Positions 4,118 through 48,869 of a DNA stretch of 64,000 bases are shown piece after piece. A model generated the notes under the pieces. That model had not been told where the DNA came from, did not search any database, and saw nothing but the letters and a program-made list of their open reading frames with translations. Both the position numbers and the translations under genes were made by a program. The number at the start of each line of letters is the position of its first letter. The first letter of the stretch is position 1. The stretch comes from Lytechinus pictus (lineage: Eukaryota), in contig NC_087254.1 in assembly GCF_037042905.1 (NCBI RefSeq), positions 11,284,001-11,348,000 on the forward strand, in the 5' to 3' direction.

Positions 4118-4292
4118 GTGGGTGTTTCATAAAGCTGTTTGTGAGTTAAGAGCAACTATAAGAATGACTGGTGATCCTTTCTTGTGGTAAATGGTAAACT
4201 GAATTGGCGACGGTCAATCTAGCGCGTAAGAAAGGTTCACCAGTCGTTCTTTGAGTCATTCTTAACTTACAAACAGCTTTATGAAACAGCCC
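4118..4292. mobile_element. MITE (Harbinger-like, CWG flanks) inserted into a tRNA-derived SINE
   Basis: TIR gtttcataaagctgtttgtgagttaag / cttaacttacaaacagctttatgaaac; CTG and CAG flanks; SINE A-box half on the left and B-box half on the right. Confidence 0.8.
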
Positions 4293-4455
4293 CAGGCTCT
4301 TGTCTTTCAATCACAGGGTTGTGGGTTTGAATCCCAACCATTGCACATTTTCCGAAAGAAATTTATACAAATTGGGCTGGGGTTATGAAAATAGTGTGCC
4401 TCGGAATAGATTAATTCTAGAAAGATCATTATTATGAAATACTTGAATATCTCAC

Positions 4456-4578
4456 CCGTTTGGCAGTCTTGTCCTACAAAACAGCTTGGGCAGTTACAGG
4501 TATATTGCTGACAGTTTCCCGGAACAGGTTGACATGCACCACCAGCTTCACAAGGATTAGGGTCACATGGATTCATTT
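4456..4578 (-). CDS. Exon 39: 8-Cys EGF ([39 protein letters not shown])
   Basis: aag acceptor, gtgaga donor, 123 nt; the donor implies further exons left of the window. Confidence 0.88.
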
Positions 4579-7500
4579 CTTTACGAAGGAAACCAATCAC
4601 ATCCAGATTAATCATAATAATCATAACAACAACAATAAAATAAAAAATATTTATCCAAAGGTAGCTACTAAAATTATAAAACCTTTTTAGCAGCGGGCCC
4701 TGTATAACACAGGGGTGTGAGTGGTCACAAATAAAAAGATCTGAAAAAAGCTGAAACTTGTAAAAAAAGTCTGAAATAGAAAGAGCTCCCATACATTTTG
4801 TACAGAGGAAAGCCAAAAGTAAGCTGAAATTAAGCTGAAAATCGAAACGAAAACAATCTGAAATCAGATAAAAATCTGAACTCTCACACCCCTGATAACA
4901 TAACATATTGCTGTTACCCTTCTCCAACCTCAATGCTGCCTAGCTAGAGGGCAGAAGGTCCCATTTTTGTAAGTCTTTGGTATCAATTAAATTCTGTCTG
5001 TATTTGGAATCGGTTCTAACGAGAGAAATGAGGTTTGAAAAGATGGTTTAACAAAAGAATCAATGTGACACAAATCTATGTGTTTCCATAGATGTCTGAA
5101 GTGTGGGTTTTCCAACATAGAGGTACTAGAAAACTCAGAAAACATGTAGACTTAGAAACATGTTTATGTAATGTATAAAAGAGTTAAATCTTCTCTTATC
5201 AATAATTGTAATACAGACTTAGAACATGATTACATATGTGCTAGTAGGATTTCCATTTCAATGATAAACTACTCCTTCAGAAACTGACAACTTCTTACTC
5301 TTCATGTGAGTGCATTTTAAATTGTGGTTGGCCAAAGAATGATAGCATATTCAATCTCATTCTTTTTCATATCAAATAGAACGTTAGTAGAGAGAAGTTT
5401 ACTAGGAAATTAAAATTACAAGATGCAACTTGTCGATGATTAACATAGAACCTAACTGAACATCAGGGGTACGTGTCATCCAAGAACCTGTTGAATGTTT
5501 TATGAAACAAGTCCTGTTTTTTCTGACAGCTTTTATACCAACAGTTATTCTTAACCAATTTAAAATTAAGGAAGACAAAAATGTTGCTGGAACACTCTCC
5601 TGAAGTGTTAAACCATATTTCTTAATACAAAAGTGAGTGTCTAATATGTTTGAAATCATACACATACCTGTCTCGCAAGTATTCCCAGTAAAACAGCTGG
5701 TGCATTGACAAGTGAAGTCATTGCATGAGGTAGCCGATATGAAGCAAACACCCCCATTCAAACACGGCTGCCCCTCACACGGATTTACTCCTGATAATCA
5801 AAAGAATGTGAAGAAATTGAGAAGTATATAGAAATAAAGGCAACTGGGTTTGTTATTTGTTTTTGTATCATTTATGTATATTCTCTCATATAACATTGAA
5901 CATATCTACGGATAGCCCCAGTTGAACATAGTTGCCAATGATTCCTGATGTTCAAAATAATGCTTCGAAGAAAGTGGTTTAGCATACCAAAAATAGCAAC
6001 TTCGTGTAATTTTTTATTTATGAAACACTGACGTTTATTATACTTGTAAATAGCAAGTGAACATAATCTAATGCAAATAGATCTTAAAATCAATACCATA
6101 CTTTAATCAAAGAAAATTCAATCTTTGATAATGATTAAGAAATACCTCAACATCGTGGGAACCCCTGAACTAATATTAATTGAAACACAATCTTATAAGG
6201 GTTAATAACTAATCCAATACTTACTTGTGCCACAGTTATCTCCTTGAAAACAGTTTGCACACTGGCACTGACGGGTAGAACAATCCAATGCATTACAGGT
6301 AGCCCCATTCAGACAAGGAAGCGATTGACATGGGTCCAATACTACATAACAATCATCAAATTAAATTGTATATTATATTGATGAACAACTAAATCAAAGA
6401 TAACTTAAAATAAGCTTGTTTGCACCATGGGTCTTTCTTCTTGAGAAAGGTATCGATCAATGTTGGAATATTCAGGCCTATGTTGTACATGCAAAGGTAA
6501 AATTAGCGCATCAACATTTATGACTGAATTTAATATGAATTCAATATAATGGATTCAAACTACCAAAAGAATAATATGTAATAATGATGAATATATTGTA
6601 TTAACATGGCAATAAATCTTATATAATCATTTATTCATGGTGAGAGAAGTAAACTTACATGTTTGACAGAATTGTCCGGTATAACATCCATTGCAGTTGC
6701 ACGTATACTGATCACATGTTCCACTAGTAGGAATGCACTCGGCTCCATTCAGACACAGATTATTTTCACATGGCTCTATCACTGTGTAAAATATACAAAA
6801 ACACACAAATGTAAGGTGTTAGTAGAAACATGGAGAAATACTGTCTTACAAAGTATTATTCTCTCAGATACATGTATATATAACAAATTCTCAAAGCTAT
6901 TAGTGGTGTAGATTTTATGGAAAACCTTTTATAACCACACATTCTACATTGATTCATTTTGGAACTGATGCTAAGCTTGTTTGAATCCAAACTTTAAAGC
7001 AAATTTTATTTTAAAACAACAAATGTCACTTCAACTTATATCAACTCATTATGATAAGAAGCTTGCCATTTATGGAAGATAGACAGTCTGATTGTGGAGA
7101 ATTGGTTGGCATGAGGCAGATGAAAGAGTTTGGGCCTTATTTGTATTATTCTTTTTTCAGAACCCAAAGTAAGAGGTAAGATATAGATATGTCGTTTAAT
7201 CTGACGCAGATGGCTCTTCAATGTTTTTGTGTCAACATCAACACAAATATTATGTTTCAATTGCACTTTTAATTTGGCTTAAAATAGTCATAAACATAAA
7301 GATACCTAGCCGTTAATATCAATTTTGGAAAATTAGTAGACCAGGGGATAGAGTCATGGAAGTCAAATGGAAGATGACTTAATTCTTCCAATCAAATATT
7401 AGTGGTATTAAAGAGTAACACAAGAAGACCCTCTCCCATTGTGTACTTGACAGATTTTTTTTAAGTTGAAGGGGGGACATCTTCCCATTTCTATAGTGTT

Positions 7501-10500
7501 CTTCCTCCTTTCTTCCCTATCTTTGTTCAATACTTAAAAGACCATAAGGGAGATGGCCACCCCTGCCCCCCCCCCCCCGTACTACCGTGGTTTCACAGTA
7601 AACCAAGTATTCTTTTGTGGGCAAGTGTTGGTCCTGAAAAGTACCACCCACACTCTTTTCCCACCCAAACTTGACGTTTTGACAAGTGTGTTTTATATAT
7701 AGTAATGCGAGTTTAACTTGCCTTGTTCACAGAACTGTCCTCTAAAGCACCCTTGGCACTGGCAGGAGTAGTCCACACAGGATCCAGGTACAGCTTCACA
7801 GACAGCTCCATTCTGGCACTGGTTTGTCTCACAGGCATCAATGACTGTTCAATAAAAAGTGATTAATCACGTTGAATTTAAGAGTGCAGCATATAATGGG
7901 GATATCTTAAAACTTGTTATGGTAAAGAATTCAAAATATCAGTTTGAATAAGCTAATGAAATAATTAAATTTGGTCAGCTGCATGTAAACTTGTCATAAG
8001 AATTGTGCATCTGTTATCATAACAATTTCTTGGTGGGAAAATAGGCCCCTGATCTAGGGCTAATAGCTCCCTATTCGGCATCTGGCATGTCCAATGTAAC
8101 TCAGAGAAAGCACTGATATAACCCTAAATACTTCTTGCATTAGATGCCCAAGGAACCTTCCCATTCAACCCCCCCAAAAAAATATGCTACTGTATTATAA
8201 GACAGTTAAAGAATTTAGCTGACAGAAAACCCTGCTTGCTACGTTGAAGGTCAAGATGCAAAACATCCTCTTCTCATTATTCTAATCAATGTAAATCAAA
8301 ACTTTAATACAAATTGTAAAATATAGAAATTGAAGAATATTTCCGAGCAATTTTTCAGCATAAAATATCAGATATTGAGTATGCTTACATTGTTCACAGT
8401 TTTGTCCTCTGTAGCAATCTGCACATGCACACTGGTGTTGGGTACATGATCCAGGCATAACTGAACAAGAACCGCCGTTAAAACATGGTCTACTTGCACA
8501 TGGCATTAGCACTACAGGCAGGTAAAAGAACATGAAAATTGAGAGAAAAATCCTTCTGCTTCAGATTCAGATCAATTCTTTCATCTATAAGGGAAAATTT
8601 ATGCTGTTAGTATAGATTTCACATATGTATGTTGTATATATATGTATAATATATGGCGATTGTCCATGCACCCCCTATAACAGATACAGCCGAGAACATC
8701 AATAAGGACCTCTGCAAGAAATTCAAAGAGTTCAGACTACAGATAACAGCCAATGCAAACAAAACCATAGTCAACTTTCTTGATGTAACAATTGACCTCT
8801 CCAAGAAAGAGTTCAGGCCTTACTCAAAACCAGATTCCCACCTATATGTGCATGCAGAATCAAATCAACCACCAGACGTCACCGGGAGAATACCACAGTT
8901 CATCAAAACCTGCCTGTCCAACATTTCCAGCAGCGTATACATCTTCAACAGTGTAAAACCAGACGAGAAAGCACTACAACATGGTGGACACAAACCCAAA
9001 CTGACATACACACTGAAAAACTCTACCAGCAGCAGTAAAAGAGACCCAAAATCAAAGAAAACAAAACATGACATGGTTAAACCCACCATACAGCAAGCAT
9101 GTCAGAACAAACATCGACAGATAGTTCCTAGCCCTTGTTGAACAGCACTTCCCAAAAGAGCACCTGCTCCACAAGGTCTGCAACAGGAACACTCTGAAAG
9201 TCAGCTATAGCTGCATGGACAACATTACCACAACAATAAAGGCCCACAACAACAGGATAACAAACACTCATCAAGACCAAACCAAGGACTCCTGCAACTG
9301 CAGAAAGAAAGAGGATCGCCCGATCCCTGGCAAATACAAAGCCGAGGCAGCAACATCTAGCGACAAGACGGTGAACATCGAGATCACATCAACTTTATTC
9401 AAAGCAAGGTATGCAACCCATAAATCAAGCATCACCAATAGGGGAAAAAGACACCAAATTGAGCTCAGCAATTACATATGGAGACTGAAGGATGAAGGCA
9501 CACCCTACTCACTCAAATGAAGGATCGTAAGACATGCGCAGCCCTACTCACTAAAAACAAAGAGGTGCAATCTGTGTCTGTGTGAGAAGTACCACATCAT
9601 TACAGCCAAGAAAACAAGAAATGCTTAACTCAAGAACATAACTCATCTCAACCTGTAAAAAAAAAAAAATTATTTTCCTCTCAGCACAGTGGTTAACCAT
9701 AGACCCCCCCTCATTTATGCCCTCAACCCACTCCGCCCCCACACTTCCCCCTACCCAGTTTAAAGCCAATAGCTATTATCTGTTAACTGTTGTCATTTCA
9801 TCCTCCTTTTTTGTGTCTTTTCTTTGTTTGCTTGACTGCAATAGAGTTATTGTTCTCTTTAATTGATTAAGTTGCTGATGAGCTTTCGGGTGTAACAGTC
9901 TGTACAACAAAACATCTAAGCAACTTGCTCTATCCTATTCTGTAGTGTCATTTAATAATAATAATGATAATAATAGCTACTTACACAGCACATAGGTTGA
10001 CTTTTCGGTGTATATCTAATATGGCACTTCAGAAAAGTAAATTCCACAAAAATAATTGAAATTGAATAGACACGGAAAGATACTAGAAAGTTAATTCTCT
10101 TTAACAAATTACACTATAAAATGTATATGAGTATCATGAAAATATTTAAATAATATGCTTTTTAACCCTAAACAGGCCGGGGGGGGGGGGTTGAATCAAC
10201 CCCCCCTCAACATTTTTTGACCGCGCCACTCGCAGAGTTTATAATTTTAAGTCTCACGCATCTTTTGAGACCAAATTTACGACGCCCGTGTACGCAGTTC
10301 CGAAATTACGCAACATATTGTAAGTGCATGTCAGACCAAAAATTGTTCCAAAACGTGATTTTGTGTACAAAGTCAATGCAAATTGAGTTTTCTCATCTTA
10401 TTCATAAAGATATGATTATTTTTACTTTAAACAGCTAAAATCAATTGATTTTAGCATAATTACGCTTCAAAAAGGTTGTGCAATAAATCTGGTGGAAAAA

Positions 10501-13500
10501 ACAAAGAAAAACAAAAGGTTGAAAAACATAGAAATACATAAGAAATTCATAAAACAATAAAATACATAAGAAATTGATTTCCGAACCGAAGTTTTATTCA
10601 ATTGCGATTGTTAATAATGCTACAAAGAATATTTTTACAAAAAATTAGCATTCTAGGAGCTTTATTTAGTGAATTAGAGCAAAAAGTATGATTTATGCAT
10701 AAATTAGCATAATTAATTCATATAAAATAAAATCTCATTATTTTGGAAAATTTTACCATACAGCCTTGTAGATTACATCGCACACTACCAGCGTGCAAAT
10801 TTTTGCGGCGCTCGCGCGATCGGCGGCCGAGATCTCAGGGGGGGGGGTGAATCAACCCCCCCCCCCCCCCCCCCCGGCCACAGAACAGCCAAAAAAGCCC
10901 GGCCTAGTTCGGGTTAAAACAAGATCTTACACGTCTCACACAGCCTTCCTGTATAGCAACCAGGGCAGTCACATGTGTAATCTATGCATGAGCCACTGAC
11001 AGGTTGACATATTCCACCATTCTGACATGGATTCGGAGAACACTGGTCCAATCCTAAAGATGAAAAACAGGATTCATTACATTGTGATAGGTAGCGATTG
11101 TTTATAGTTTTCTAGGAAACTTCATCATACAGAATGAATGTCTATGGAAAATGGCATTAGTGTCTTAAAATATTGTCAGAGGCAATTAAAGAACTATTGA
11201 ATTGACAAATTTATACCAGGTATCATATCACAAAACATAACACATAAATGGAAACATTAACCTTATTCCACTAATGTACTAGGAGACTAATAAAATATCA
11301 TGTGCCATCATGAACAATAATCTATCTGTGAAGCTACTCCTTTACTGCACCCATCACAGAACAGTATAATTTATTGTCCCAGTCATGTGGCACCTGTGTT
11401 TTCTCACTTACTTGAATTAATTTTGCATCCATTAGCTCTATCATCAACACATTTTGCAATGGCCCTTTCTAATGAAGACCAATACGATATAAATTGTACA
11501 AGTGATATGAGGACTTACTGTTCTGGCAACGATCCCCAACATAGCACTGTGGGCATCGGCAGATGATATCTAAGCATCGGCTTCCTACAGCGTCACAAGT
11601 ACCTCCATTCAGACAAGGATTGGGTGAACATTGATCTAATCCTAGGAGGGTTAAGTACAAAACAAAGTTATATATAATAATACATGGTGGCTCAGGGGTA
11701 CAGTGTCTGTCTCATGAAGGAGAGTCGTTGGTTCAATCCAAGGCCGAGCCATACCAAAGACCTTAAAAATGGGACCTTCTGCCTTCTGATCAGGTGCTTG
11801 AAGTATAACATTGGAAAAGGGTAATAACATTATATGCATGGCCTGCTGTGAGAACAGGGGAGTGTTTGATCAAAATTTTCATTTATTTATTTATACATTC
11901 GTTCATCTACTTTTTTCATTTCATCATTGATTCATTTATTTATTTATTATTTTTTTTATTTAATAATTATTATTTCCCACTTAATCATAATTTTAAAATT
12001 ATATATTTGAAGGGATGTATCCTAATGATTCATATGACGGAACTGAGAGAAAATTATTCATAATGAAAAATCACACAATCACTCTCCCCACTGTGGGTGT
12101 AAAACATTGTCTATTAATATCATATCTCAGGATTCACATAAATTCTATGGCCATATTCTGAAGTTCAGTTTAACGTAAACCATGGTCTTACTGAGTGCTA
12201 AAATTATGGGTAGCTAAACGTTCAAACTTTGTTATATATTTCTTACATTTACTGTGTTCTTTCCCCTTGCTCCTTGCTCTAATGGTGAAAAAAACATTTC
12301 ATTCATTATCCCAAGACAGATGAATAAATTGAGCATGAAATGTGCTGACAAATTGAACCTATATTGTGAGTGAGAGATTAGTGTCGCAATTGGCTCTCCA
12401 TAGCTAAACCACAACTTCAGACCAGAGTTTGAATTTATTCCAAGTTTGAAATATGGGTAAACATGTCTTTGAACCATATCCTGGTAATGCACTTACTTGT
12501 CTGACACTGATCTCCTACAAAACACAGCTGACATTGGCATGTATAATCAGTGCACGACCCTGGTGTGCGGATACAGAATCCATTATTCTGGCAAGGATTT
12601 GGGCTGCACTGATCATCAACTGGGGTGGAATAAACAAAGAGAAGTTTGAATTGCCCAGCTTGTCTATAAGGAATGATATTGTGCTGAAGAAAGACATGCT
12701 CGAAAACTTTTTTGTCATGCACTAATCAGGAGTACACACTGCTATTGATGAGTGTAAGACAAAAAAAATTGTCTTTATTCAGCACCATTTTCAAATTTTG
12801 TAGCACTAAACTACTTTCATGTTTGTATTTATTACAAATTGCTTAAGTGAAGGAAAATAGGGAGAGAACTATAATGAATGTGAAAAAAAACTACCTAGAG
12901 AGGTCTCTAGCTACAATACCGCCTTACTCAAGCGTTTCTACTTGTCCCTTTTCAAGCGTAAATATCTTGAATCTTGTAAATACATTTTCCATGATCTGAC
13001 CAAAGCTGCATCTTGAGACCAAACTAAAATCTCAATACAAAGAGAGTTGAAAAAAACAACTGCCTAATATTAGCAGTATTGCCAATTCAAATATTGATAT
13101 AGAAAAGGGTACAGAAAGTTAACTTTTATACCATAATGGTTCTCTAATTTTCACAAATGTTGTTGCAATATTGCTTAGCTTATCCCTGTTTTTCACCACA
13201 TATCATGGGAGATTGACTTACATATTTCGCAGTTCTGTCCTTGGTAGCAATTGGTACAGCTGCATTGGTATTGATCACATTGATTGTTCAGTACCGAACA
13301 TGTTCCTCCAAACTGACAAGGAAAACTACTGCATGGATTAAAAACTGAGAAGAGAGAAACAAATAATGTTGTTGCATCAGAGAATATCAACTAAAATGTA
13401 TCTTGTCTTTGATCACTTCATACAAATATTGTGTGAAACTTAACTACATCTTAAGCTCCTGTACAGTTATCAAGATTGATTAATTATCAATATCTCAAGC

Positions 13501-16500
13501 ACAATGATATGCAATTTCAAGTAACATTTGTTATGATAAGAAATTACTGGTTATAAACACAATGTACATGAAATTCATGTTGGAAATTATTAAAAAATGT
13601 GTGGATATTTTCACTCTTCAATGCTGTATTTTAATATTTTGAAGTCTTCAGTACATAAGAATCTGATTATCTATATTCGATCAATACATTGGTTCTTGAC
13701 TTACATATTTCACAGAATGACCCCGTGTAGCAGGCTGGACACTGGCATGCATAGTTGAAACACGAGTTGGGATTAGCCATGCAAGTACCTCCATTCTGAC
13801 ACTGATGATTGGCACAGGCATTTTGCTCTGAAAGATAAAAAGATATAAAAAAGCAAACTCTCTTTTGATGGGGATTGTATAGAAAGGTTTTGATGTGTAC
13901 GTAGTTCTTTTCATTCAGGGACCACAGAACAGTTTTGTAATTTGAACCAAATGTAGGGGAGCAGCTGACCATGCAAAAAAAGGCACAATACCATATGACT
14001 GTCATTTCTTATGTTTTTTATACTTAAAAAAATAAGAGGAGCTGAAGTTCACTTGCCACTCCCCCCCCCCACATGGCATCAAGTTATTAACATTCCCGAC
14101 CTTTCGTTGGAGAACGCGAACGCTATTTACGACGGTAGTTGATTTTGGAAGAGACTTTTGGGCCCGTCGTAACTTGTAAAAGACTGTCCTGCAATTTAAA
14201 TTATGTGACAAGAAGATTTTGTTTAGCTTTCGCATCTGCAACGGAAACATCAATCTGCGGTGCATGTGCAAAATACTATGGTAACAGCAACATATCCGAT
14301 GAAGGATGACTTTTCAGAGCCACATTTGGTTCCTCCTTTAGCTCAGGAAGCCGCCCGTGGGGGCCACTTCCATTGACGAGTGCATACCAGGCGCGACCAT
14401 GCTAAAGAGGTTTTCCTTTTCAAGAGCCGGCTTGTTTACGTATGTAAAGTAATTGGGTGCTTTTCGAAGCCTTAAGTGGTATCAATTCGTCAGTGGAAGT
14501 GGTCCCCGGAGTTAGCCGGGGAAGCAACATCCAATCAGCGCGCCTGTACCTAAAAAGCGCCTTATAAGTAGCCGAGCTGGTATCTGGAGTTTAATATCAT
14601 CTAAATCAACGACAGTCCTAAAGTCAACTCAGTACAGGTTACGGCTTTATGTTAAATGTGAAAGATTTAGATTCGAAGGAGGTCATGGATGTAAGCTTGA
14701 ATTCGGTGAGTTTCTTAGAAACTCCTAGAAGTATCTAGAAGAAAATGTTACATAACCCCAAAAAATACAAAACATGTATAAATTTCAATTTTAGCTTCCA
14801 AAATATAAAATTGCCCTAATGGGCAGCTCTGCAGAGCTTGCTCCATCAGTTTGAACTAATGTTTAATGGGTCTTGTACCCCTATCTGAGAAAAATTTGTG
14901 CGAGGTCATGAGGACCCCCAGCCCTTTGGACGACCTTTATCAATCAAGCATGCGTCTTTATCGCCAGCTACATACACGGTATGTCTTCGAAACTTGATGT
15001 TTGATAAGCTCAAATCTTATACCCCCAAACTTGGGGGTAAGTATTCGTGCTGGAGTTGGAATCACACACCAATATATATTTGCAATTTTGCTTATTCGAT
15101 CTGAAATAACATGTACGGCTTTTGTATGTATTTCCATTGGTATTTTAAGTCTGTATATGTGCATACGTATTTGTAACGTTGTAAACCTGATGTGAAAGGA
15201 ATTTCCTACAAAGGAAAATAAGTACATTCAATTCAATTCAAATTGCTTGTCATCTCGCGGCCGGCTTTCAAATGAAACAACACAACAAAGTCACGCAATC
15301 ATTGTCTTATTGTAACAGTTTTTAATTTTTACTTCCCAGAAGATTAGATTGGAAAGTAAAGTCAGTGCTGATCTGGACTTCATCGTGTTAAGTTCTAATT
15401 TATTCTGCATTCACCCTATCTTCAGTTTAATAATTTTAGTTTAATCAAAGTAAGGAGAGCTTTGGAGATTGAATTTACAGGAGAGCATAGGAGACTGAAG
15501 TGCAAGAGTTTATGATTTTGGAGTGTACAACGGTCATGTTACAGTAATTTATGAGCATTTGAATGGCAAGATCAATGAAGATTCTTCTATTGGCAATGCA
15601 AAAATTAAGGGACTGAAAGATTTCCACAAGCTAGAAAATATTGGGTTTATCAAAATAGGGCAGTGCATTTAATCAGAGGTGAAAAGAGGCATATTGCATA
15701 CATGTAAGAGGAATTCAGTGTGAAAAAGGAGCGAAATGGCGGCAATAAACAAAATTAGTATAAAGGGATTATTCTGTTGAAAAGATTACTTCCAGAAAGG
15801 AATAAAAAAAACACTAAATCAGTTAAACCGACGCTACGGGCATCAAAAGAGCTGTTACATAGAGGAAACTTTTTTATACGAATAGCGGAAAGTGCGTTTG
15901 TTAAATAAAGTCAGTCTAAGATTAAAAGGGACAATAGACATGTTTGTAAAGGAGTTTTATGTGGGTAGAAAGAGGCACGTTTTAACGTCATCATATTTCA
16001 TGAATATCCAATGTATTGTGTATTAAACAGAGATACTCATTTTACCTTTTTCTTTTAGCGTCTGACGGAGAAATATAGCCTTGTGAGAGACAGTTTGAAC
16101 AGATATTGGTTATTTTAATGCAGGATTATATGTTTTTAATCATGAAATGTATGAACATTTTCATTATGTACACTATATATGTATCAAATTACCTTTTCAC
16201 CCTTTGTTCTTTTCATCCGAAACAGTACGACGTGGGACGCCAAGAGTTGCAGCATTTTGATCGGGAGGTGACTGTTGTAAAACCGTTCCAGCACAAGAGC
16301 AAGACCAGTCAACGCGGAAAGGCGTGGTAGGAGGTTGCTGAACACATGCAGCAGAGGTGATTTAGAGTCGACGCCCGCGCGGTAAGAGATAAAATGAATC
16401 TATTGAAAAACCAAGTAAAAATGCGAAACAGGCAAGAGAGAGCTGCCAGTGGCATTGCCATAAATGAAACTGATGAGGAAAGGAGAAACAGACAGGCGAT

Positions 16501-37500: not shown

Positions 37501-40500
37501 AGAAAAAAGCATAACTATATCTTGGATATTTCTCAACGCATTTCACATTCTAGTTTAGTGACAAAATTTGGGAAATTACTAATATAAATTTGTCTGTCTC
37601 AAATGCACTGGAAGGCTACAATCCAATCCGATCCTAGTCATTGAATTGGTACTACACTCTTTCCTTGTAGTTACAATGTGCTTCACAATTTGCTACATGT
37701 CAGTCACTCAACAGAAACATTTGAAAAAAGACCAGTTCAATTCACTTCTGTAATTATAGCTTATGACTTTTTTTAACAAAAGATGGGCATACGTTAAGTC
37801 CACTATTCTGAAAAAAAATGGCTTTAGATTTAACAAGGATTCTATGAGATACAAGTCCAAGTTCAGGAGAACATTTCATTAAGGTACTCACATGTTTCAC
37901 AGGTCAGTCCAGTGCTGCAGCCCTGACAATTGCAAGAGAACTCTGTACAGGATCCAGGTGTTGCAGTACAGATGCTGTTAAACTGACACGGGTTGGGGTT
38001 GCACTGATTTTGAGCTGGATAAGAAAGACAGTACAGTGTGTATCTTACGGCAGGGAGGTTACCTATTTGTTATGTTAGTCAAATTTCCAGAAACTGAAGC
38101 TACTACTTTTTAAAGAGAAAACAGAAATATTAAGGAGAATGTAGCTCCAAACACCTACAAAAACAATGCATACATAAAACGTTCAAGAAGTTGTTTTATT
38201 GAAATCGGGGGCCATGTAGTACCCAAACTTAAAATATAGATATTCATAAGCAATTGTACAGCAATCATATATATCATTTATCAAAAACAGTGCACCAAAG
38301 TAACTGGGACCAAATATATTACCAATGTTACACATATTATTTGTGTTAGGAGAAAGTAAAATGGAGGTACCGTTTTCACAAAACTGTCCTTGGAAACATC
38401 CAATGCACTGGCATTCAAAGGCATCACACGATCCACTAACAGGAATACAGGCTGCCCCGTTCATACATGGTGACGGTTCACATGGGGTAATAGCTGTAGA
38501 TGTAAATGGAACACACACTACTCTTTTAACGCTGCATTGATTCCTAACAAAATCATTCATTCATGTTTTGTTACATGTTCTATTCAGTTCATATAATCAA
38601 TTTGCCATGGACCCAATGGAGAAAGTAAGATTAATTTACCTTATGAAATCCACTGTTTTGGGACCTCTTGCAGAAAGAGATCTCTTTAAACGCAACTATT
38701 GCAATAAAATGAAACAATCATAATATCCACTTTCTTTTAATTAGTTACTTGAAAATATATGTGTAAGGTTCTTAAAGTTATGCCTGAATGCATCTCTTCT
38801 GTGACTGGGTCTCTTTTACTTTATCATCATTCTCTTCCTCCTCCTGTAAATTAATGCTAAAGTGTTTTGGTTGAAGCAAAATCAGAGATAATGAAGCAAT
38901 GAAATAAATGATGGAATCATTAAAAGTGGTTTACCTCATTTTCAAAATAAAAAGTTTAATTCATTAAACTCACTCTTTGAATCATCATTATGATACTCAC
39001 GTGTAAGACAGTTCTGCCCTGTAAAGCACCCCTGACATGTACAACTATAGTCGGTACAGGTTACAGGACTACACAACCCCTGGTTGCCACAAGGATTGTT
39101 ACTGCAAGGATCCAGCTCTGTGAAAGATGCAAGGAGATATAATATTAGTTTGTGATACAGGGAAACATTTTCATATGGTCATGAATACACAATACAATTA
39201 TTTTTATCCATTCGGGCATACATGAGAAATAATTTGTCCTTTTCATGTTTTTCTGTCAGATTAATGGTAAAAGAAAGTAGTTGCAGCAAGCAATTATTTC
39301 ATGACAAAGTCTTTTAAATCAAGGTTAATTGTCACCATATTATCATATATCTAGATCTGATACATTAATGTAAACTTATCTTTGTGTAATCGGTTAAAAT
39401 CGATAATTCTGATGATCACTAACACAGAAAAGCATATGACAGCGCATTATTATTGCTTGATAAAATACCTGACACTTGATGGAATTCCATGCTTATCTTA
39501 CTCATTTCTCGCAATCATGCATTTTCTTCCAGAGCCATTTTGCACATATTTTTTATTTATACATACAAACACTTGGGTGGTAATTTCATTGGATTCTGTT
39601 TGAACTCTTTTTCAGGTCGTTTCCACAACTGGTGTTTATCTTTAACTTCAAATATTGAATATTCATGTTAGCAGAACATTTAAAAAGGACATAAAATCCC
39701 CATGGTGTAAAGTAAAAAGGGCACATTTCACCTATTACAGCAAATAACACATTGGCTACTGAATTCTATGATTCCTGTAGTCTTTGTACAGGGATCACCA
39801 GATTTTACTTGGCAATTAATTTAGAAATTTAGAAAACTTATTTGTCACATGCTTTGCAGTTCACCCCTATGTGACTGCAACAGAAATGCACATGAGATTC
39901 TCTTCACTTAGCTATGCATACAAGGCTTTGTGTTATTCATCTCGATCACACCATAGGACAGGGGTAATCAACCCCACCCCCACTTGGTTACACGGTCCTT
40001 ATTACAACTGGCAGGCAAAAGATATTCATTCGAGCCAACCCATTCTCAATTTTTAAATTTGATATTGCTGATTGACAAAAATGAATGAATATGATTGACA
40101 ATCTAACACTGATTCTAGGGAGGGTACCTACTGAACTTCCTTTTTCCAAATTGGAAAGATATATCACTACTTTGGAACTATTTTTTTACTGGCGGAAGAA
40201 TTAGGGCCGTTAACTCTCTCAAGTGATGAATTTGATCCTGTCAGGTGTAGTCTTCATAAATGCCGATTTATTTTTAAAATGAGCCATTTGAGGTACCCTT
40301 TTCTGGTCATATATGAAATGTCAGACATATATCCTCTCCACTGGTAGTAAACATTCAACCCTCGGATTTCCTCCTTATTTTCTATGAATTTTTTTAAAGT
40401 GGCACTTTAACACACGAGTCTATGGGAAATGAATTAGGCCTGTGATACCACTTACTGTCTGCGAGAGCAGTGTAACATGGACAGAATATCCTCATACTTA

Positions 40501-43500
40501 CGAGTTTCACAGTTCACCCCTGTGTTGCAATTGCGGCAGATGCAGCTGTACTCGGTGCAAACAGTACTTGACGGTATACATAAACCATCGTTCTGACATG
40601 GATTCGGACTGCATGGTGTTATACCTGGATGAAGGACCAATCATTTAACGTCTTATTATAAAAACATAGCATGTTGAATGAGTTCAATATTACAATACAA
40701 TGAGTTCAATATTATAAATAATTTGATGCTTAAGTTTGGTATTCCCAAAGACATTTTCACATGAAACCAAGTCTACCATAAATTAGCCATAGTATTGAAC
40801 ACATTTATTTGAAGATAAATTAAACAAATATCAAATTGTCAGGGGAAAATGAAAATAAGACATTCAAGCACAGAAATTCTGTCTCTCTTGGGTTAAAAAT
40901 ATTTTGATTTCTTTTGTTACCACGGAAGTCATGAGGATATGGAAATAGGGATTTCCATATTAGTGAGCGTTGGGATATTGGGACACCGCTGAACTATCAC
41001 CAGGGAGTGGAGGATCTGTTGGCACTGCCTGACGGCTAGTGCCAACCTGATAACAAGATTAATGGTGTAAGTGCTTGGAAACACCACATTCAGAGCATTA
41101 TGAATGCAGAATATTGTGCATCTGACTTAGCATATTGGAAAGCTTGTTCGAAGCCAACTTATAGCAGAGCCACACTGGCTTAACTGACTTTAGACGGCCT
41201 TATCTACTGTATTTCCAATGATGTATACCAAGGGTCAGTTTGAAGTCAGTTTAACTGGTTTGATTGTAGCACAATAATCATCTACTCACCCTGTTGACAG
41301 AGGGATCCTTCAACACATGCTGGGCACTGGCATGTGAATGATGTACATGAACCTTGATCAGTGATACAGGTACCTCCATTTGCACAAGGATTGTTAACAC
41401 ATGGATTCAAGTCTGAAAATGTACAATGGTTAATCTCTTATACACTTTGTACGATTATAGATATCACAACTGAATTTTCATGATTCTATATTCACTTTGA
41501 ATCTAGTATTCTGATATCGCTTCAAGTATACTACAACCAGCTTAGATTCTTATTGGTAATGACATTGTCATATAGATCAACCTTACCATGTATACAGGCA
41601 TTAATTACTCATGCTCTATTGTTAATGATATTTTCATAAAATTCCAAATAAATGTACCCCAAGTGCTGGATAGAGTGTGGCCAACTGATAGGTGTGTCAA
41701 ATTTTATCATCAATATTAAACCAGCATGCTCTCAAAATGATGTTCATGTTATCTTCCATACAAACTATAAAGACAAATAAGACAAGCTTTCAAATGAATT
41801 TTATACAAAATAGTGGTGCTAATACTGGTAGTCTGCATGATAAATGTGAAGTTGGAAACAGTGGGAAATCATTTATCAACTTCAAATTCTTACCAGTTCC
41901 CATGTACGTTGTCACCGTTTCCCCCAAAGAGCTCATATCTTCTTTACAATAAAATCAATTCACTATAATCCTCTTCTGTATTTTGTTCTAGTGGATGAAT
42001 ATTGCCCCATTTTCTACATTATATACGTTAACTAGCATACTTAACTGAAATAATGCTTAATAAGGCATTTTCCACTGTGGCTTTCATGCATGAACATACC
42101 TGTTGCACATGTTGATCCCTGAAAGCATGCGTCACAGGTACAGATGAAACCCAAACAGTTGTTTGGATCCTGTTGACAAGTTCCTCCATTAAGACAGGGG
42201 CTATTCGCACATGGATCAATGGCTAGCAGGAAAAAGGAGAGTTATCATTTATACATTTGAACTTGGCATAAATGTTTAATATTAATCATATGGAATCAAA
42301 GGTTGACTGTCCGTCTCCTGAAGACGGACAGTCAACCTGCCCGAAACGTCGAGTCTCTCTACTACTCATCATCTCTACTCGCCGACTCAAGCCAGCGTCT
42401 CCTCACTAGCTCTACTACTCAAGCTGTTCTCAACTCATCAATCTTTCCTGGTTTACAGTCCTTTTCAGGACTACTTTCAAGAAAGAATACTCTACTCTCA
42501 AATCTCCACTTTCTCGCCTATCCATTTCTTCTCTTCTCCTATCCACTGTTTCTACAACACTTCACATGGTGTACCGTAAACCACATCAGCGATTGTACAT
42601 ACCACTATGCAAACCTTCAAACAACATCTCAAAATGACTTTGTTTCCAGATTAATTTTACCTATTGAATGATACTGGGGGTTGAACCAAGGCTCTTCCAT
42701 TCAAGTAAATTTCATTCTAACTTGTAATACAGTTCACTCCTCACCGGCAAACTGCAATTTGACTTCACAGAATAATACATTATGTTGTGTGAGTAATAAG
42801 TGTATTTGCGAATATAACCAACAATCCATGACTCATTGAAAATTTTACATTGATTGGGAAAATAGCATCAGTGACCAACCATCTACCTCATGAACAGGTT
42901 AACCAAGTCACCTACACCACGGCCACCAACATTCTGCCCTCTTATCAGGAGCTTGGCATTTTGAAATAGATAATTCTTATAACATAAGTACACTGTGAAC
43001 GGCCCTTCGACATGTAAGTGATAGGCCTTCTCACCTAAGATTAAAATATTAGATATTAAGAGATGATTAAATGATTCCAATTTTTTTCAATTTTCATCAT
43101 GTGTAATTTTACTTATGAAGTGATGAGTTCAGTATTCTAACAAGTCATGATATTGAGGTGGTGGTTTTCAGAACTGTTCCAGATATACCTTGGACAGGTA
43201 ATTTTACTGATGCCCTTGCTGATGTGCATTGTTTGAATACTTATGGTGAGAGACTGCTGATTTGACAGGCTCCATTGATACATGAACTGGGATTGCATGG
43301 ATTCGTGGAGTAGGAGAGAGAGATTGTGAGAGAGGGGGGGGGGGGGGCAAATATCAATGCTGATGTATATTATCTGAATACTTACGGATGTCACAGTTCT
43401 GACCAGTGTAGCACAAGTTGCAAAGACAACTGTACTGTGTGCATGGTGAGAAACTGCTGATCTGACAGGCTCCATTGATACATGGACTGGGGTTGCATGG

Positions 43501-46500
43501 ATTCTGACCTGTTAAAAGAAAGGGAGTGGAGATTGAGAGAAAGAGAGAGAGAGAGAGGGGGGGAAGAACGGGGGGAGATAACAAGATACTTTAAATACTT
43601 ATCGACCGATCTCAACCAACGTGTAAACAAGCACTACAATACACAATTTAAAGTTGTGATATTCTTAATAAACTTTCACCATTGTTTACGATTTTCAAAT
43701 GAATAATGTTTAGGTGTAAATGAATATATACTGTATGTCGAGGTATGTACACTATACGGAGTATAATAATCTGTAAACATTATTTTAGTGGACTTACCAA
43801 CAGTGCAACGGTCCCCTGTAAAACATCCTTGACACTGACAGGTGAAGTCTGTACATGAACCATCGATTGCTGAACACTGTCCTCCATTCTGACAAGGAAA
43901 ACTACTACACGGATTCATCACTGAGAATGGAAAGACAGAAAGATCAATAATTATCATGGCATGAAACACGAATGAGATGGAGGAAAAAAGCTGTTTGTAA
44001 TAATAATAATAATAATAGGCATTTATATAGCGCCATCTATCTAGAAATATTCTATTCTGAGGCGCACAAGAAAAGAAAGAAAGTTTGGATGAGTGTCAAA
44101 GTGCCAATAACTAATACTGTTAGAAAAGGTAAGACTTCAGTTTAGATTTGTAGGTCTCCAGTGATGGTATCATTCTTAAATATAACGGCAAATTATTCCA
44201 GAGAGAAGGTGCTGAGGCAGAGAAAGCTCGCGCACCATGTGCTACACGTGTCTTGGGAGTCTTAAGAAGTTGCTGGTGTGATGATCTTAGGCTACGAGCT
44301 GGTGTATAAGGCATGACAAGGTCTTGTAGATATGTTGGTGCCAAACCATTTAACACTGTAAGTGACGAATGACATTGTGCATGACTAGTGACCCTTTATT
44401 GAGCTATATGACATAACCGTATATCCCTATGCAGCTGATATAATACTTATGAACATGTTTCAATTGAGCACAACGTCATGCTTAACTTTGCAAACAGCTT
44501 TATGAAACGCCCACCAGTCTCTTAAATAGGGCACAGACTGAGGTGTTTAATGTTATCATTTATGATCCCCACTTTGTGTATCCTCAGTAGTCATGGGGTC
44601 ACCCTTTCTGATTCAACATGCTAAGAAGTATATCCCAATTATAGGTAACAACTCAATTCTTATTTTCGTAGTAAGCTGGAAAATATCTTCCTCTGACTTC
44701 TAAATTACATCACTGCATCTGATAGGGACTGGATAGTCATAAATACTATTTAGTCAGAAAACTAGCCGATTCATCGATAGGAAACATGGATCGTAGGGGT
44801 GTTTTGGTCTAGTGGTTACAACTCTCATCTTTCAATCAGAGGGACGTGGGTTTGAATCCCAGCCATGGCGTGTTTTCCTTCAGCAAGAAATTTACCCACA
44901 TTGTGCTGCACTTGACCCAGGTGAGGTGAATGGGTACCAGGTAGGATTTATTCCCTGAATGCTTTAGCGCCTATACGATGGCTCAGCTACAGCCGCGGTA
45001 ATAATATGATCCCAAGTATCAAGTGCAGTATATGGAATTATAGTAGCTGCACTATATAAATGGAACATATTATTATTATTATTTATTTCAAAATATCAAA
45101 TAAGATTTTTTTTACAAATGATCAGGAATGACAGTGAATACTAACACGTGCTGCAGGTAGGTCCTACAAAACACCCAGTACACACACAGGATGTAGACGT
45201 GCAATCGGGTGACATCAGGCATGATCCCCCATTTCTACATGGGTTGTTTGTCTGGCACAGGTCAATTCCTAAAAGCACAATATCATAGAAAAAGATATGT
45301 AATTTTTCATTACAATTTTTGTACAATGTAGCTATCCAAATAGAAAAATGATGAGAAAAAGCATTTCATAGATAAGATAAGATTTTATCAAATGTTATCA
45401 ACCCGCAATCAGGAGTATGATATTCTCAACAAGAACCAATTTACAATGATGAGCATGTGTATAAAATTAATATATTTTCAATAATAAATATAAATTTTTC
45501 CATTGTGAAAATACATGTTGCAAAAGGTTAATAGAGCAACAACATTAACAAAACCCACTATAAACTAATTTTAAAGTTGTGTTAAGCACAATTGCATTGT
45601 AGAATGCGTATCGATGTTTAACCACTCTCCCACTTCTGGTAGTTTCATTCACTCTGGTAACTAAATTTTCTACATAAACAGATAAAAATTGTAAAAATAA
45701 CAAAAACCCCACAAAAACAATAACCGTTAGTCCAAGACATATCAGAATACAATAAAAACCACAATTCAGCAACATGACAGTTACTTTTGATAAGAGGAAT
45801 GCCAACAAGAATGGTTTACAAACATTGTCTAACATGTAAGTGGTAGTCGCATCTTCAAACTTGGAAATCATGAATATACCATATATTAATTTAAATTCAA
45901 AGTTAGAATTAGGCACTTACTCTGTGAACATGTATTTCCAATGAAGCACACATCACACTGACATACAAAGTCAGTGCATCCGATACCCTGTGGAATGCAG
46001 ATCCCATTGTTCTGACATGGGTTGGGATTCTGGCATTGGTTTATACCTAGTGATATAAAAAAGATCATTATATAGTTCAGGAATAATAAAGGTTTGACCT
46101 CAAATTTGAAGTCAATGACCTGAAAGTCATCTGAGTTCAATCTCCCTACCTCTTGATCTTAAAGTTAAGGTTATTACAACGGCTATTGCTGGTAAATGTT
46201 TAATGCCTTAGTAATATTTCTTTAATTATAACAATCAGGACAGTCACTTTATGACTATTAATATTTTTTTTCAATCTCTCCATTTTAGATTTATGTAAAT
46301 TAGATATTGCTCTACTTATCAGATCTTTCTGAAAGTTTGGTAATTCATTTTTGGGACTAAACAGTAATGCAGTGCACAAAGAAAATTATATCACAAAGTT
46401 TTAGGGGTTCACCCACAAAATCAGTCATTTTCCTTGACTACTGTAAGTTATTACAATTCTTGAAACATTTTACAGCATATTGATGAATTATATTAAAATA

Positions 46501-48869
46501 AAAAGAAAGGCGAGACACAAAATCACACGAAGGCTTTGGCACACTAAAACTATTCTCTTAATCAATGACAACATTAATGCAGGAATCAGTTTTCTCCCTT
46601 TTTTAGCTCTTAAGGCATTCCCTTCATTTCTCTCAATTTTTAGATCTGAAATGGACTACTCAATAAAAGTAAATTAGACTATTTAAACAAAAAATTGGAA
46701 TAAGTTTCCCAAATCTCTAACCAAAAACGGTTATCAATATTTAACTCCCCAGCATTCAGCATATACTGTATTATATGATGTATCTGTAGATTCCCTCCAA
46801 GAGTCCACTCTAACATTTTAAAAGACCTTTGCAAGTTCATGAAAGTAAAAATAAATGTTCACAATTGTCACTTGGCCAAAGACATCTCTAAACCGCACTA
46901 CACAACATTCTCAATCTCTCTAAATCCATCGTCACCCCCAAACCATCACAATAGATGACACATATTTTGGGGAGGCCTTTCTTGTGTTTCAGATCTCCGC
47001 GAACCCCTTTTAATCACTGGTCTCAATCAAGACTCGGCTGCATCACACAAATACAGATGCAAAATGAAATGCATTAATGATATATTTCATATACACCTTC
47101 AAAATAACGAAATTGTTAAATTACTTACGGCTTGAACAGGTTAAGCCAGTGAAGCAGGGTGGGCAGTCACAGATAGTTGAGGTACACTGACCATTGGTAA
47201 AACAGGTCCCACCATTCAGACATGGGTTACTAGTAGAACACAAATTATTACCTAATGTGCAAAAAAAACATCGGAACGTTTGTATGGCATATCAAAATTT
47301 TGAATTTTTATCACTCAGATTCAATAACAGTACAGCAATTCATTGTTCTTGAACTCTACTAAAATCATTGTTCCCGCCTCTGTACTACTCAAGTTGTGAT
47401 ATATCCTCGCTTACCATATACATTTCTCATTCACACAATACACTTGTAACATGTAAAGAAATGAGTTTCTTATTGACTTTATGGTACATGAGAAAGTGCA
47501 CAGTCTCCACCATCTAAATGATTCAGAAGAAAATGCCATAACAAAGAATGTTTGTTTACAAATCAGCAATTCGTGAAAATGGGAAAACATATCAGGCAAA
47601 TGAGGGCAGGTACACTAAAATTATCTGTACATGGATTCAAGATAAATCCAGATCAGTTGTGAATAGTGACCAAACTCTGAATTCAATTTCAATTCTAAAG
47701 ATTGATTTTTTAACTCTAAAAGTACATTTAGATTAAAATACTCACAGATTTAATCCTAATCCAGAGGTCGACTGGTTACTATTCACATCTGATCCAGATT
47801 TAATTAAAATCCATGTAATTCAGTGTTTATCAGTTGAAAACTTATCTCACTCATTAATCCTCCTGTACGAAAAGGTACAAAGATCTATCGCCTAGCATAT
47901 AAAATACACAAGGGTGACAGGCTATTTTGCCCTCATGACAGCCCAAATCACCTCTTATATTCCCCAAATTTCTGTTTCTGTTTATGGTAATTCGTGTAGG
48001 AACTCGGCAGGACAGCGTTTTGCTGGTAAATGCCAAGCTGGCATATAACCAATTACCTACAAAACATTTTACGTCTAGGTTAATTAGTCATAGTGGCTGA
48101 TGTTATAGATGACAGATATCACTCTCGGGCCTTTTTATCAAAGTGGAGACAATGGCAGAGTTGGGATTTGAACTCACAACCTTGCGATTATGAGTCCAAT
48201 GCTCTAACCACTGGACCACATGACCTGTGTGGTCCAGTGAATGCTTTGGGTGACCATTTTTTTTAGAGTTGCCAAAAATCTGCCACAAAGTCAAGAATGG
48301 TTTAAGAAATCAATATTCTACAATACACATACACTAGAATTTTTTTCAGAGTTGCCAAAAATCTGCCACAAAGTCAAGAATGGTTTAAGAAATCAATAAT
48401 CGACAATACACATACACTAGAATCATGAAATTCGCATCTAAGCCTACCATATCACTGCTTAATGCACAAAGGGTATCCCTAGAAATGTAAGAGAGAGCCC
48501 CCCAAAATTTAGCAATTGCAACAATGTGATATTAATAATGGCCCCCAAATTATTTGCTAGTCTGCTGTCACCCTTACCTATCTCGCATCTGTTACCATTG
48601 TAGCACGGAGTACAGCTACAAGTGAAGGTGTTTGACTGGAAGTTAGGGGTACAGGTCCCTCCATTCAGACAAGGACCCCATCCACATGGATCAGTTGCTG
48701 GAGGAAAAACAAAATTTCATTTTACATTTTGAAAATAATTCATATAAATATATCATCTTTTTTGTCAATTCCATTTGTTATATAATAGATCAACAGGATG
48801 TCATATATACTTTATGGATGTCCCTGCACAATTGTTTCCAACCCCTCCTTACCCTTTTACCTATCTATC

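What the first reader, a model, noticed from the sequence alone, without database searches (positions are those of the whole stretch)
4456..48697. Array of 8-cysteine EGF modules whose two extra cysteines probably staple each module to the next
Seen: exons 5-39 (35 modules) all read C1-x4..6-C2-x4..5-C3-x4..7-Ca-x4-C4-x-C5-x2-Cb-x5-C6, and the spacing from Ca to C6 never varies although other residues diverge. Ca lies in the C3-C4 major hairpin loop. Cb replaces the usual Gly of C5-x-x-G-(F/Y)-x-G-x-x-C6. Established: in Notch/fibrillin-type tandem EGF pairs, the aromatic residue of that G-(F/Y) motif in module n packs on the tip of the major hairpin of module n+1, whereas within one module the two sites lie at opposite ends. 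The pattern differs from laminin LE repeats (extra pair after C6) and TB domains. Integrin I-EGF offers a partial analogy, with an upstream Cys bonding to the hairpin turn. Inference: Cb(n) bonds to Ca(n+1), making a covalently locked EGF rod of at least 36 units. I do not recognise this as a described EGF subtype, but cannot confirm novelty without a search.
Basis: partly seen in the sequence, partly recalled or inferred. Interest (0 to 1): 0.92.

Follow-up and report, generated by a model that had tools for sequence, protein, structure and literature searches.

The report
Disulfide-stapled EGF rod, 77 modules
A giant sea-urchin membrane protein gene encodes a chain of 77 EGF modules, each with two extra cysteines whose presence and absence at the array ends show that each module is disulfide-bonded to the next, an EGF variant we found described nowhere.

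Summary
On the minus strand, 35 single-module phase-1 exons (47251-4456) each encode an EGF module with 8 cysteines at the stated spacing.

- The array runs beyond the window. It has one opening module that lacks Ca but has Cb (48697-48578, also noted by the scan on this same window, s1-324899). Then come 75 full modules and a closing module with Ca but no Cb.
- After that come a separate two-module pair (no Ca/has Cb, then has Ca/no Cb), 11 ordinary 6-Cys EGFs, a transmembrane helix and a 15-residue tail.
- In this gene, Cb(n) and Ca(n+1) are both present at 77 junctions, both absent at 12, and never discordant.
- The same one-module offset recurs in hyalin of all echinoderm classes sampled, in hemichordate membrane proteins, and as isolated pairs in rotifers (91 unique junctions against 12 discordant).
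- An intramodule Ca-Cb bond is therefore effectively excluded.

It remains inferred that Cb, rather than a re-paired C6, is the bridging residue.

No Pfam family, solved structure or paper with this connectivity was found. No annotated protein product and no RNA run were found, so expression is untested.

The parts
60259..60370 (-). Exon 1: start codon and signal peptide (37 aa; hydrophobic core [11 protein letters not shown], ends AIAQ-E), phase-1 GTAAG donor
   Evidence: The N-terminus resembles that of hyalin P0112.
54336..54455 (-). Exon 2: ordinary 6-Cys EGF of the type that opens hyalin
   Evidence: Pfam EGF 18.1 bits.
49853..50224 (-). Exon 3: CUB domain
   Evidence: Pfam CUB E 1.8e-10. 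tblastn match to hyalin P0112 residues 79-195, 35% identity.
48578..48697 (-). Exon 4: array module 1, 7 Cys, lacks Ca and has Cb (opens the stapled run)
47129..47251 (-). 8-Cys module exon (array module 2)
45921..46046 (-). 8-Cys module exon (module 3)
45146..45268 (-). 8-Cys module exon (module 4)
43798..43920 (-). 8-Cys module exon (module 5)
43386..43508 (-). 8-Cys module exon (module 6; C2-x4-C3)
42100..42222 (-). 8-Cys module exon (module 7)
41290..41412 (-). 8-Cys module exon (module 8)
40502..40624 (-). 8-Cys module exon (module 9)
39001..39117 (-). 8-Cys module exon (module 10; short C3-x4-Ca loop)
38371..38493 (-). 8-Cys module exon (module 11)
37892..38014 (-). 8-Cys module exon (module 12)
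37270..37386 (-). 8-Cys module exon (module 13; short loop)
36481..36597 (-). 8-Cys module exon (module 14; short loop)
35338..35460 (-). 8-Cys module exon (module 15)
33276..33398 (-). 8-Cys module exon (module 16)
32491..32607 (-). 8-Cys module exon (module 17; short loop)
31769..31891 (-). 8-Cys module exon (module 18)
30117..30239 (-). 8-Cys module exon (module 19)
29004..29126 (-). 8-Cys module exon (module 20)
28140..28265 (-). 8-Cys module exon (module 21)
27465..27593 (-). 8-Cys module exon (module 22; C1-x6-C2)
26583..26699 (-). 8-Cys module exon (module 23; short loop)
25032..25154 (-). 8-Cys module exon (module 24)
24572..24694 (-). 8-Cys module exon (module 25), followed by a 10.7-kb intron
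13705..13827 (-). 8-Cys module exon (module 26)
13222..13344 (-). 8-Cys module exon (module 27)
12497..12619 (-). 8-Cys module exon (module 28)
11519..11641 (-). 8-Cys module exon (module 29)
10931..11053 (-). 8-Cys module exon (module 30)
8389..8511 (-). 8-Cys module exon (module 31)
7722..7844 (-). 8-Cys module exon (module 32; GC donor)
6659..6781 (-). 8-Cys module exon (module 33)
6225..6341 (-). 8-Cys module exon (module 34; short loop)
5668..5790 (-). 8-Cys module exon (module 35)
4456..4578 (-). 8-Cys module exon (module 36). The gene continues below position 1 of the window for about 58 kb.

Best explanation
The window holds the 5' half of a gene of about 119 kb and about 95 exons on the minus strand. 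It encodes a type I membrane protein of about 3,900 residues.

Domain order: signal peptide, one ordinary EGF, a CUB domain, a run of 77 stapled EGF modules, a separate stapled pair, 11 ordinary EGF or cbEGF-like modules, one transmembrane helix, and a 15-residue tail.

Each stapled module most likely keeps the three canonical EGF disulfides. It also carries Cb (three residues after C5, directly before the conserved packing aromatic) and Ca (in the turn of the major hairpin, five residues before C4).

Cb of module n most likely bonds to Ca of module n+1. Every junction is then covalently locked at the interface that Notch and fibrillin hold together with a hydrophobic contact and calcium. The result would be a calcium-independent, disulfide-continuous rod.

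Shown: the exon structure, the cysteine pattern, the one-module offset in the presence and absence of Ca and Cb, and its recurrence in other proteins.

Inferred: that the extra cysteines are oxidised, that Cb and not C6 is the bridging residue, the rigidity of the rod, and expression of the gene.
For: 1. Offset in this gene. Module 1 lacks Ca and has Cb. Modules 2-76 have both. Module 77 has Ca only, 78 has Cb only, 79 has Ca only, and 80-90 have neither. Junction counts for Cb(n) with Ca(n+1) are 77 both, 12 neither, 0 discordant. Four modules have an odd cysteine count.

2. Same offset elsewhere. The hyalin array reads -b ab ab ab ab a- (a = Ca present, b = Cb present) in sea urchins, a brittle star, sea stars and sea cucumbers (some sea-cucumber arrays have three full modules). 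Hemichordate P0107 and P0118 show it too. Rotifers (P0002, P0024, P0169) and the unnamed ENA protein P0103 carry isolated -b then a- pairs. Over 7,030 unique junctions in database proteins the counts are 91 both, 6 Cb only, 6 Ca only and 6,927 neither.

3. Parity is rescued when no Ca follows. P0062 and P0285 have a lone Cys 6-7 residues after C6. Bdelloid P0168 and P0176 have an extra Cys beside the next C1. Crinoid P0361 has a vicinal CC at Cb.

4. Geometry. [quoted passage not shown] That aromatic is F, Y or W in 65 of 77 modules with Cb. The AlphaFold2 model of the hyalin array (pLDDT 87) keeps both EGF hairpins, with Ca in the turn between the major strands and Cb just before the first minor strand. 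Three-module stretches superpose on Notch1 EGF11-13 (TM 0.6-0.68).

5. Register. Cb keeps its distance to the aromatic and to C6 even where C5-Cb grows to x4 or x6 (P0062, P0107, P0118). Ca is fixed relative to C4 while C3-Ca varies from 3 to 10 residues. All 77 stapled junctions have a 6-residue linker, and unstapled junctions vary.

6. Selection. Non-cysteine identity between the 75 full modules averages 31%, yet all 600 cysteines are kept.

7. Calcium. The residue before C1 is Pro in 38 and Glu in 0 of 77 stapled modules, against Glu in 4 of 11 unstapled modules.
Against: - No disulfide was observed.
- The offset rule fits equally well a re-paired scheme in which C5 bonds Cb and C6(n) bonds Ca(n+1).
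- Two orthologous proteins (P0184, P0193) carry a Cb with no extra Cys in the next module. P0144 starts with a module that already has Ca.
- No RNA run was listed, and the runs that were laid are DNA of a relative.
- No annotated protein with more than 7 such modules exists in the two protein collections searched. Expression of this gene is therefore unproven.
Confidence: 0.75

Rival explanations
1. Neighbouring modules are still joined by a disulfide, but with re-paired cysteines. C5 bonds Cb in a local CxxC loop, and the freed C6 of module n bonds Ca of module n+1.
For: It predicts exactly the same presence and absence offset as the staple model. C6 lies at the junction. The end caps with a lone Cys 6-7 residues after C6 (P0062, P0285) could close a small C6 loop. 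In integrin I-EGF, a Cys next to the previous module's last Cys bonds the hairpin Cys (PMC12383024).
Against: - The segment Cb-aromatic-x-Gly-x-x-C6 keeps the canonical minor-hairpin spacing in all modules.
- C5-Cb spacing is not conserved (x2, x4, x6).
- The model keeps the minor hairpin.
- This scheme needs an existing disulfide to be rewired, rather than two point changes.
Confidence: 0.12
2. Ca and Cb form a fourth disulfide inside each module, as in other 8-Cys EGF variants.
For: 75 of 79 array modules in this gene carry both cysteines.
Against: - Four modules of this gene and 99 of 170 unique database modules with an extra Cys carry only one of the two. They are always ordered as Cb first, then Ca in the next module.
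- By published EGF geometry the major beta-turn of a module faces the preceding module. That the packing-aromatic site faces the following module, placing the two sites at opposite ends, is an inference from it.
Confidence: 0.03
3. The extra cysteines do not bond within the chain. They are free thiols, metal ligands or intermolecular cross-links that polymerise the protein. Teneurin's odd EGF cysteines are an example of the last (my own knowledge).
For: The orphan Cb in P0184 and P0193 has no visible partner in its own chain. The protein may belong to an extracellular matrix, as hyalin does.
Against: - A generic cross-link or metal site does not predict that arrays open without Ca and close without Cb, nor the isolated adjacent pairs in rotifer proteins.
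- It also does not predict the invariant 6-residue linker at stapled junctions only.
- 154 unpaired thiols in one secreted chain would be unusual.
Confidence: 0.05

Closest known systems
Tandem EGF/cbEGF rods of Notch and fibrillin
   Same: - EGF fold with the six canonical cysteines.
- One module per phase-1 exon and a 6-residue linker.
- A conserved aromatic at C5+4 that packs on the next module's major beta-turn.
- Best sequence and fold matches: Notch1 EGF4-7, 11-13 and 20-24.
   Different: - Two extra cysteines per module, placed at that very interface.
- The calcium-binding consensus is mostly lost (Pro before C1 in 38 of 77 modules, Glu in none).
- The junction would be covalent rather than held by calcium and hydrophobic packing.
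Integrin beta I-EGF domains
   Same: Eight cysteines. One extra Cys lies in the hairpin between canonical C3 and C4 and bonds a Cys lying upstream of canonical C1. In beta3, a disulfide spans the EGF1-EGF2 junction (PMC12383024).
   Different: In I-EGF the upstream partner lies in the linker just before canonical C1 (my reading of the 1-5, 2-4, 3-6, 7-8 pattern), so the bond counts as intradomain. Here the partner lies inside the preceding module's minor hairpin. No integrin chain appears among the sequence or fold matches.
Laminin-type EGF (LE) repeats
   Same: Eight cysteines, four disulfides per repeat, rod-like arrays.
   Different: By my own knowledge, the LE extra pair (C7-C8) lies after C6 and closes an extra loop within the repeat. 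Here both extra cysteines lie before C6 and their occurrence is offset by one module. No laminin EGF hit appears in Pfam at E up to 10.
Hyalin (sea-urchin hyaline-layer protein) and its paralogues
   Same: - The same N-terminal cassette: signal peptide, atypical EGF, CUB.
- The same stapled module type: hyalin has a 6-module array reading -b ab ab ab ab a-.
   Different: - Hyalin is built mostly of HYR repeats and has only 5 staples.
- This gene has no HYR match in the 214 kb examined and has 77 staples.
- Sources name these proteins Notch-like, mucin-like or uncharacterised, not as a distinct EGF type.
Teneurin EGF repeats
   Same: EGF modules with an odd cysteine that bonds outside its own module (my own knowledge). 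Pfam EGF_TEN gives weak matches.
   Different: Teneurin's odd cysteines link two chains. Here the partners alternate along one chain. EGF_TEN scores 31.9-39.4 bits against a cut-off of 65.

Membership tests
EGF-like domain (Pfam PF00008, Notch/hEGF type) | Six cysteines at EGF spacing that match the family profile and fold | tested here: met
   PF00008 is the best or only hit for 5 of 6 single modules, at 16.7-29.4 bits around the 21.5 cut-off. The best PDB sequence matches are Notch1 EGFs. The AF2 model matches Notch1 EGF arrays.
EGF-like domain (canonical) | Exactly three disulfides, all confined to the module | tested here: not met
   There are eight cysteines per module. The modules with 7 Cys at the array ends require a partner in the neighbouring module. 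The bond itself was not observed.
Calcium-binding EGF (cbEGF, PF07645) | D/N-x-D/N-E/Q consensus directly before C1 | tested here: not met
   In the 77 stapled modules the residue before C1 is P 38, Q 11, A 9, V 7, L 5 and E 0. There is no EGF_CA hit for stapled modules. Some of the 11 C-terminal 6-Cys modules do read IDEC or VNEC.
Laminin-type EGF (LE) | Extra cysteine pair located after C6 | tested here: not met
   Ca lies between C3 and C4, and Cb between C5 and C6. There is no laminin EGF hit at E up to 10.
Integrin I-EGF | Extra cysteine in the C3-C4 hairpin | tested here: met
   Ca sits five residues before C4 in the turn of the major hairpin.
Integrin I-EGF | Its partner is a cysteine in the linker just before canonical C1 | tested here: not met
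   The six linker residues hold no Cys in any of the 77 stapled junctions. Only the bdelloid rotifer variants P0168 and P0176 have a Cys there.
TB (8-Cys) domain of fibrillin/LTBP | Characteristic cysteine triplet and TB profile | tested here: not met
   There is no CCC triplet in any module and no TB hit in Pfam.
Hyalin family | N-terminal signal peptide, atypical EGF and CUB cassette | tested here: met
   tblastn match to hyalin residues 79-195 (E 5e-12) and Pfam CUB at 1.8e-10. The signal peptide and first EGF resemble those of hyalin.
Hyalin family | HYR repeats | tested here: not met
   tblastn of hyalin residues 1-3480 and of its C-terminal part against 214 kb around the gene gives only CUB and EGF matches.
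Teneurin EGF (PF25024) | Profile match above the curated cut-off | tested here: not met
   31.9-39.4 bits against a cut-off of 65 for three stapled arrays.

The most novel reading that the evidence does not exclude
Stapled EGF is a distinct extracellular building block, conserved in all five echinoderm classes and in hemichordates. In it a disulfide has taken over the role of calcium at every EGF-EGF junction. This gene uses 77 consecutive staples to make a covalently continuous rod, about 200 nm long and insensitive to calcium, anchored in the membrane. It would be a force-bearing or spacing tether with no described counterpart. The rotifer form (Ca-x3-C4, isolated pairs) would be a second, independent invention of the same staple.
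Probability: 0.35. Interest if true: 0.78.

Novelty: new variant of a known kind. Interest (0 to 1): 0.63.

Why it matters
EGF modules are among the most common and best-studied extracellular building blocks. Their disulfides are taken to be confined to the module, and array stiffness is attributed to calcium and a hydrophobic contact.

A form in which every junction is covalently stapled would change three things.
- It would change how such arrays are expected to fold. Oxidative folding could no longer proceed module by module.
- It would change how they respond to force, calcium and reductants.
- It would change how they are annotated. Here Pfam matched individual modules only weakly and sources call these proteins Notch-like or mucin-like.

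The staple also sits in hyalin, a classic protein of sea-urchin development. In addition, it gives protein engineers a natural design for locking tandem EGF modules.

The claim can be tested directly on a small recombinant fragment.

Tried and rejected
- **SG-SG distances.** The hyalin 6-module array was folded (pLDDT 87), but no coordinate file is exposed.
- **Folding the window's own modules in tandem.** This was impossible.
- **Ortholog of the giant gene.** No protein with more than 7 stapled modules turned up in the exhaustive profile search or in two word-based searches covering 366-1165 and 2899-9224 residues.
- **RNA evidence.** None was listed. The four runs that were laid are DNA contigs of a relative, at about 90-95% identity. 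They cover exons and introns alike with no splice joints.
- **Reading other stapled loci of this genome.** I did not try another route.
- **Super-repeat within the array.** None was found. Mean identity is flat at about 0.30-0.34 for lags 1-24.
- **Fibrosurfin as the gene's identity.** Rejected, because fibrosurfin is defined by SURF modules.
- **Complex prediction.** Not used. Its score would not report on the disulfide.


Full report
**Observation**

It matches 35 times, all on the minus strand, from 47240 down to 4463.

Each match is flanked by a polypyrimidine tract and AG 11 nt upstream of C1. Each has GT (34 exons) or GC (1 exon) 7 nt downstream of C6. Every module is therefore its own phase-1/phase-1 exon, 117-129 nt long, and consecutive modules are separated by six residues.

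In the alignment of the 35 modules, seven of the eight cysteine columns and the Gly three residues after Cb are invariant. The C3 column is offset by one module with a shorter C2-C3 loop. Mean column identity is 54%.

Pfam sees only the generic EGF family, at scores around its cut-off. The best solved relatives are Notch1 EGFs. Their alignments show Ca inside a three-residue insertion of the C3-C4 hairpin and a non-cysteine opposite Cb.

**The whole gene**

The window is G000:C10:11284001-11348000. I read 150 kb more around it. The exons in order are:
- Upstream, a start codon and signal peptide at 60370-60259.
- An ordinary 6-Cys EGF at 54455-54336.
- A CUB domain at 50224-49853 (Pfam E 1.8e-10), which also matches hyalin residues 79-195.
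- A 7-Cys module at 48697-48578.
- Downstream of the window, 40 further 8-Cys modules, then three 7-Cys modules and eleven 6-Cys EGFs.
- A last exon encoding a transmembrane helix and a 15-residue basic tail followed by a stop.

All splice phases agree. The product is a type I membrane protein of about 3,900 residues from about 95 exons spread over about 119 kb.

**The decisive pattern**

Write a for Ca present and b for Cb present. The modules then read:
- module 1: -b
- modules 2-76: ab
- module 77: a-
- module 78: -b
- module 79: a-
- modules 80-90: --

(module 76 was corrected by eye because its C1 lies upstream of the regex start.)

Cb(n) and Ca(n+1) are both present at 77 junctions, both absent at 12, and never discordant. 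Four modules have an odd number of cysteines. An intramodule Ca-Cb bond would leave those four with a free thiol. A bond from module n to module n+1 leaves none. The direction is also fixed: arrays open without Ca and close without Cb.

I checked it and found the other three.

**Replication in other proteins**

A profile of the 35 modules was searched against 1.84 billion representative proteins. The top of the list was ordinary 6-Cys EGF giants, but it also held proteins with short arrays of the same module. Look-ups of their cluster records and source names gave their origins:
- hyalin and paralogues of sea urchins
- proteins of a brittle star, sea stars and sea cucumbers
- a crinoid adhesion GPCR
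- membrane proteins of two hemichordates

In the complete arrays the reading is -b, then a run of ab, then a-. P0062, P0361 and P0144 end or begin differently, as described below.

Rotifer giants (Seison, Brachionus) and the unnamed ENA protein P0103 carry isolated -b followed directly by a- within otherwise 6-Cys arrays.

Over 7,030 unique junctions the counts are 91 both, 6 Cb only, 6 Ca only and 6,927 neither. These are not independent events, but the association is overwhelming.

Where a final Cb has no Ca to meet, parity is restored by another cysteine:
- a lone Cys 6-7 residues after C6 (P0062, P0285)
- a Cys beside the next C1 (bdelloids P0168, P0176)
- a vicinal CC (crinoid P0361)

True exceptions are an orphan Cb conserved in Diadema and Lytechinus (P0184, P0193) and an Amphiura model (P0144) that may lack exons.

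**Which cysteine bridges**

The offset alone cannot separate Cb(n)-Ca(n+1) from a re-paired scheme (C5-Cb plus C6(n)-Ca(n+1)). Five lines favour the former.
[quoted passage not shown] Cb is the residue just before that aromatic, which remains F, Y or W in 65 of 77 modules.
- An AlphaFold2 model of the hyalin array (12-sequence alignment, pLDDT 87) keeps both hairpins of each module. Ca lies in the turn between the major strands and Cb at the start of the minor strand.
- Three modules of that model superpose on Notch1 EGF11-13.
- Cb keeps its spacing to the aromatic and to C6 even when C5-Cb lengthens to 4 or 6 residues in hemichordate modules. Ca is fixed relative to C4 while C3-Ca ranges from 3 to 10 residues.
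- All 77 stapled junctions have the 6-residue linker, whereas unstapled junctions vary.

Coordinates of the model were not available.

**Selection and calcium**

The 75 full modules share on average 31% of their non-cysteine residues (maximum 59%) and show no super-repeat, so the array is old. All 600 of their cysteines are nevertheless kept, which puts Ca and Cb under the same constraint as the canonical six.

The residue before C1, which is Glu or Gln in calcium-binding EGFs, is Pro in 38 and Glu in none of the 77 stapled modules. It is Glu in 4 of the 11 unstapled C-terminal modules. I infer that the staple replaces calcium as the element that fixes the junction.

From general knowledge of EGF rods (about 2.5-3 nm per module), 79 stapled modules would span roughly 200 nm. 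That length is an estimate, not a result.

**Novelty**
- No Pfam family other than generic EGF reaches its threshold on stapled arrays; EGF_TEN stays far below its cut-off.
- No solved chain with this pattern appears among the sequence or fold matches.
- Four full-text searches on EGF cysteine patterns and interdomain disulfides found no description.
- The nearest precedent is integrin I-EGF, where a hairpin cysteine bonds a cysteine just upstream of the module (PMC12383024).

I class this as a new variant of a known kind.

**Limits**
- Expression is untested. No RNA run was listed, and the runs laid are DNA of a relative about 5-10% diverged, which at least shows that the locus exists there too.
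- No annotated product of this gene was found in either protein collection.
- A DNA pattern for the Cb motif occurs about 210 times more often in this genome than its reversed control, and this gene accounts for about 77 of them. Further stapled genes therefore exist, but I could not read them.

Noticed in passing
G000:C2:48906093-48910433 (minus strand), outside the window: Five hits of the Cb DNA pattern translate to exactly the five Cb motifs of P0114, the 'mucin-17-like' protein of Lytechinus pictus. That protein's contig is 70.58 Mb, and C2 here reaches at least 69.7 Mb. The genome is therefore probably L. pictus or a very close relative.
   Followed up: partly
G000:C1:28068611-28076817 (+) and G000:C2:60681080-60683408 (+): Further clusters of the Cb motif (10 hits in 8 kb, and 5 hits in 2.3 kb) are probably other stapled arrays.
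   Followed up: no
G000:C18:9548328-9589467 (minus strand): Dozens of EGF-like profile hits with equal scores (39.3 bits) lie many about 333 bp apart. They look like a tandem array of near-identical units.
   Followed up: no
window 2-2845 (+): An open reading frame of about 948 aa for a LINE-type endonuclease and reverse transcriptase lies on the opposite strand, inside the 6.8-kb intron between array modules 36 and 37. A second RT fragment lies at 56070-57248 (+), in the intron between exons 1 and 2.
   Followed up: no
window 39158-40536: Intronic high-copy repeat. Contig depth in a relative's DNA runs is in the 10^4-10^5 range, against tens elsewhere, and many internal joints are seen.
   Followed up: no
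window about 4110-4300: A short element of about 180 nt has dozens of listed copies (about 40 loci) across the genome at about 88% identity. Each locus also matches on the other strand at about 76%, which suggests a palindromic, MITE-like structure.
   Followed up: no
window 53827-53977: A run of 151 N (assembly gap or mask) lies in the intron between the first EGF exon and the CUB exon. It was left as it is.
   Followed up: no
proteins P0002, P0024, P0103, P0169 (rotifers and one unnamed ENA contig): Their isolated stapled pairs have Ca-x3-C4 and linkers of 6-8 residues. Echinoderms and hemichordates have Ca-x4-C4 and long arrays. This may be an independent origin of the same staple.
   Followed up: partly
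array modules 1-79 of the gene (window and downstream): Consensus sites of the EGF O-glycosylation type are frequent: C2-x4-S/T-C3 in 40 of 79 modules, C1-x-S-x-P/A-C2 in 21, and S/T two residues after Cb in 47. There are only 8 N-x-S/T sequons.
   Followed up: no
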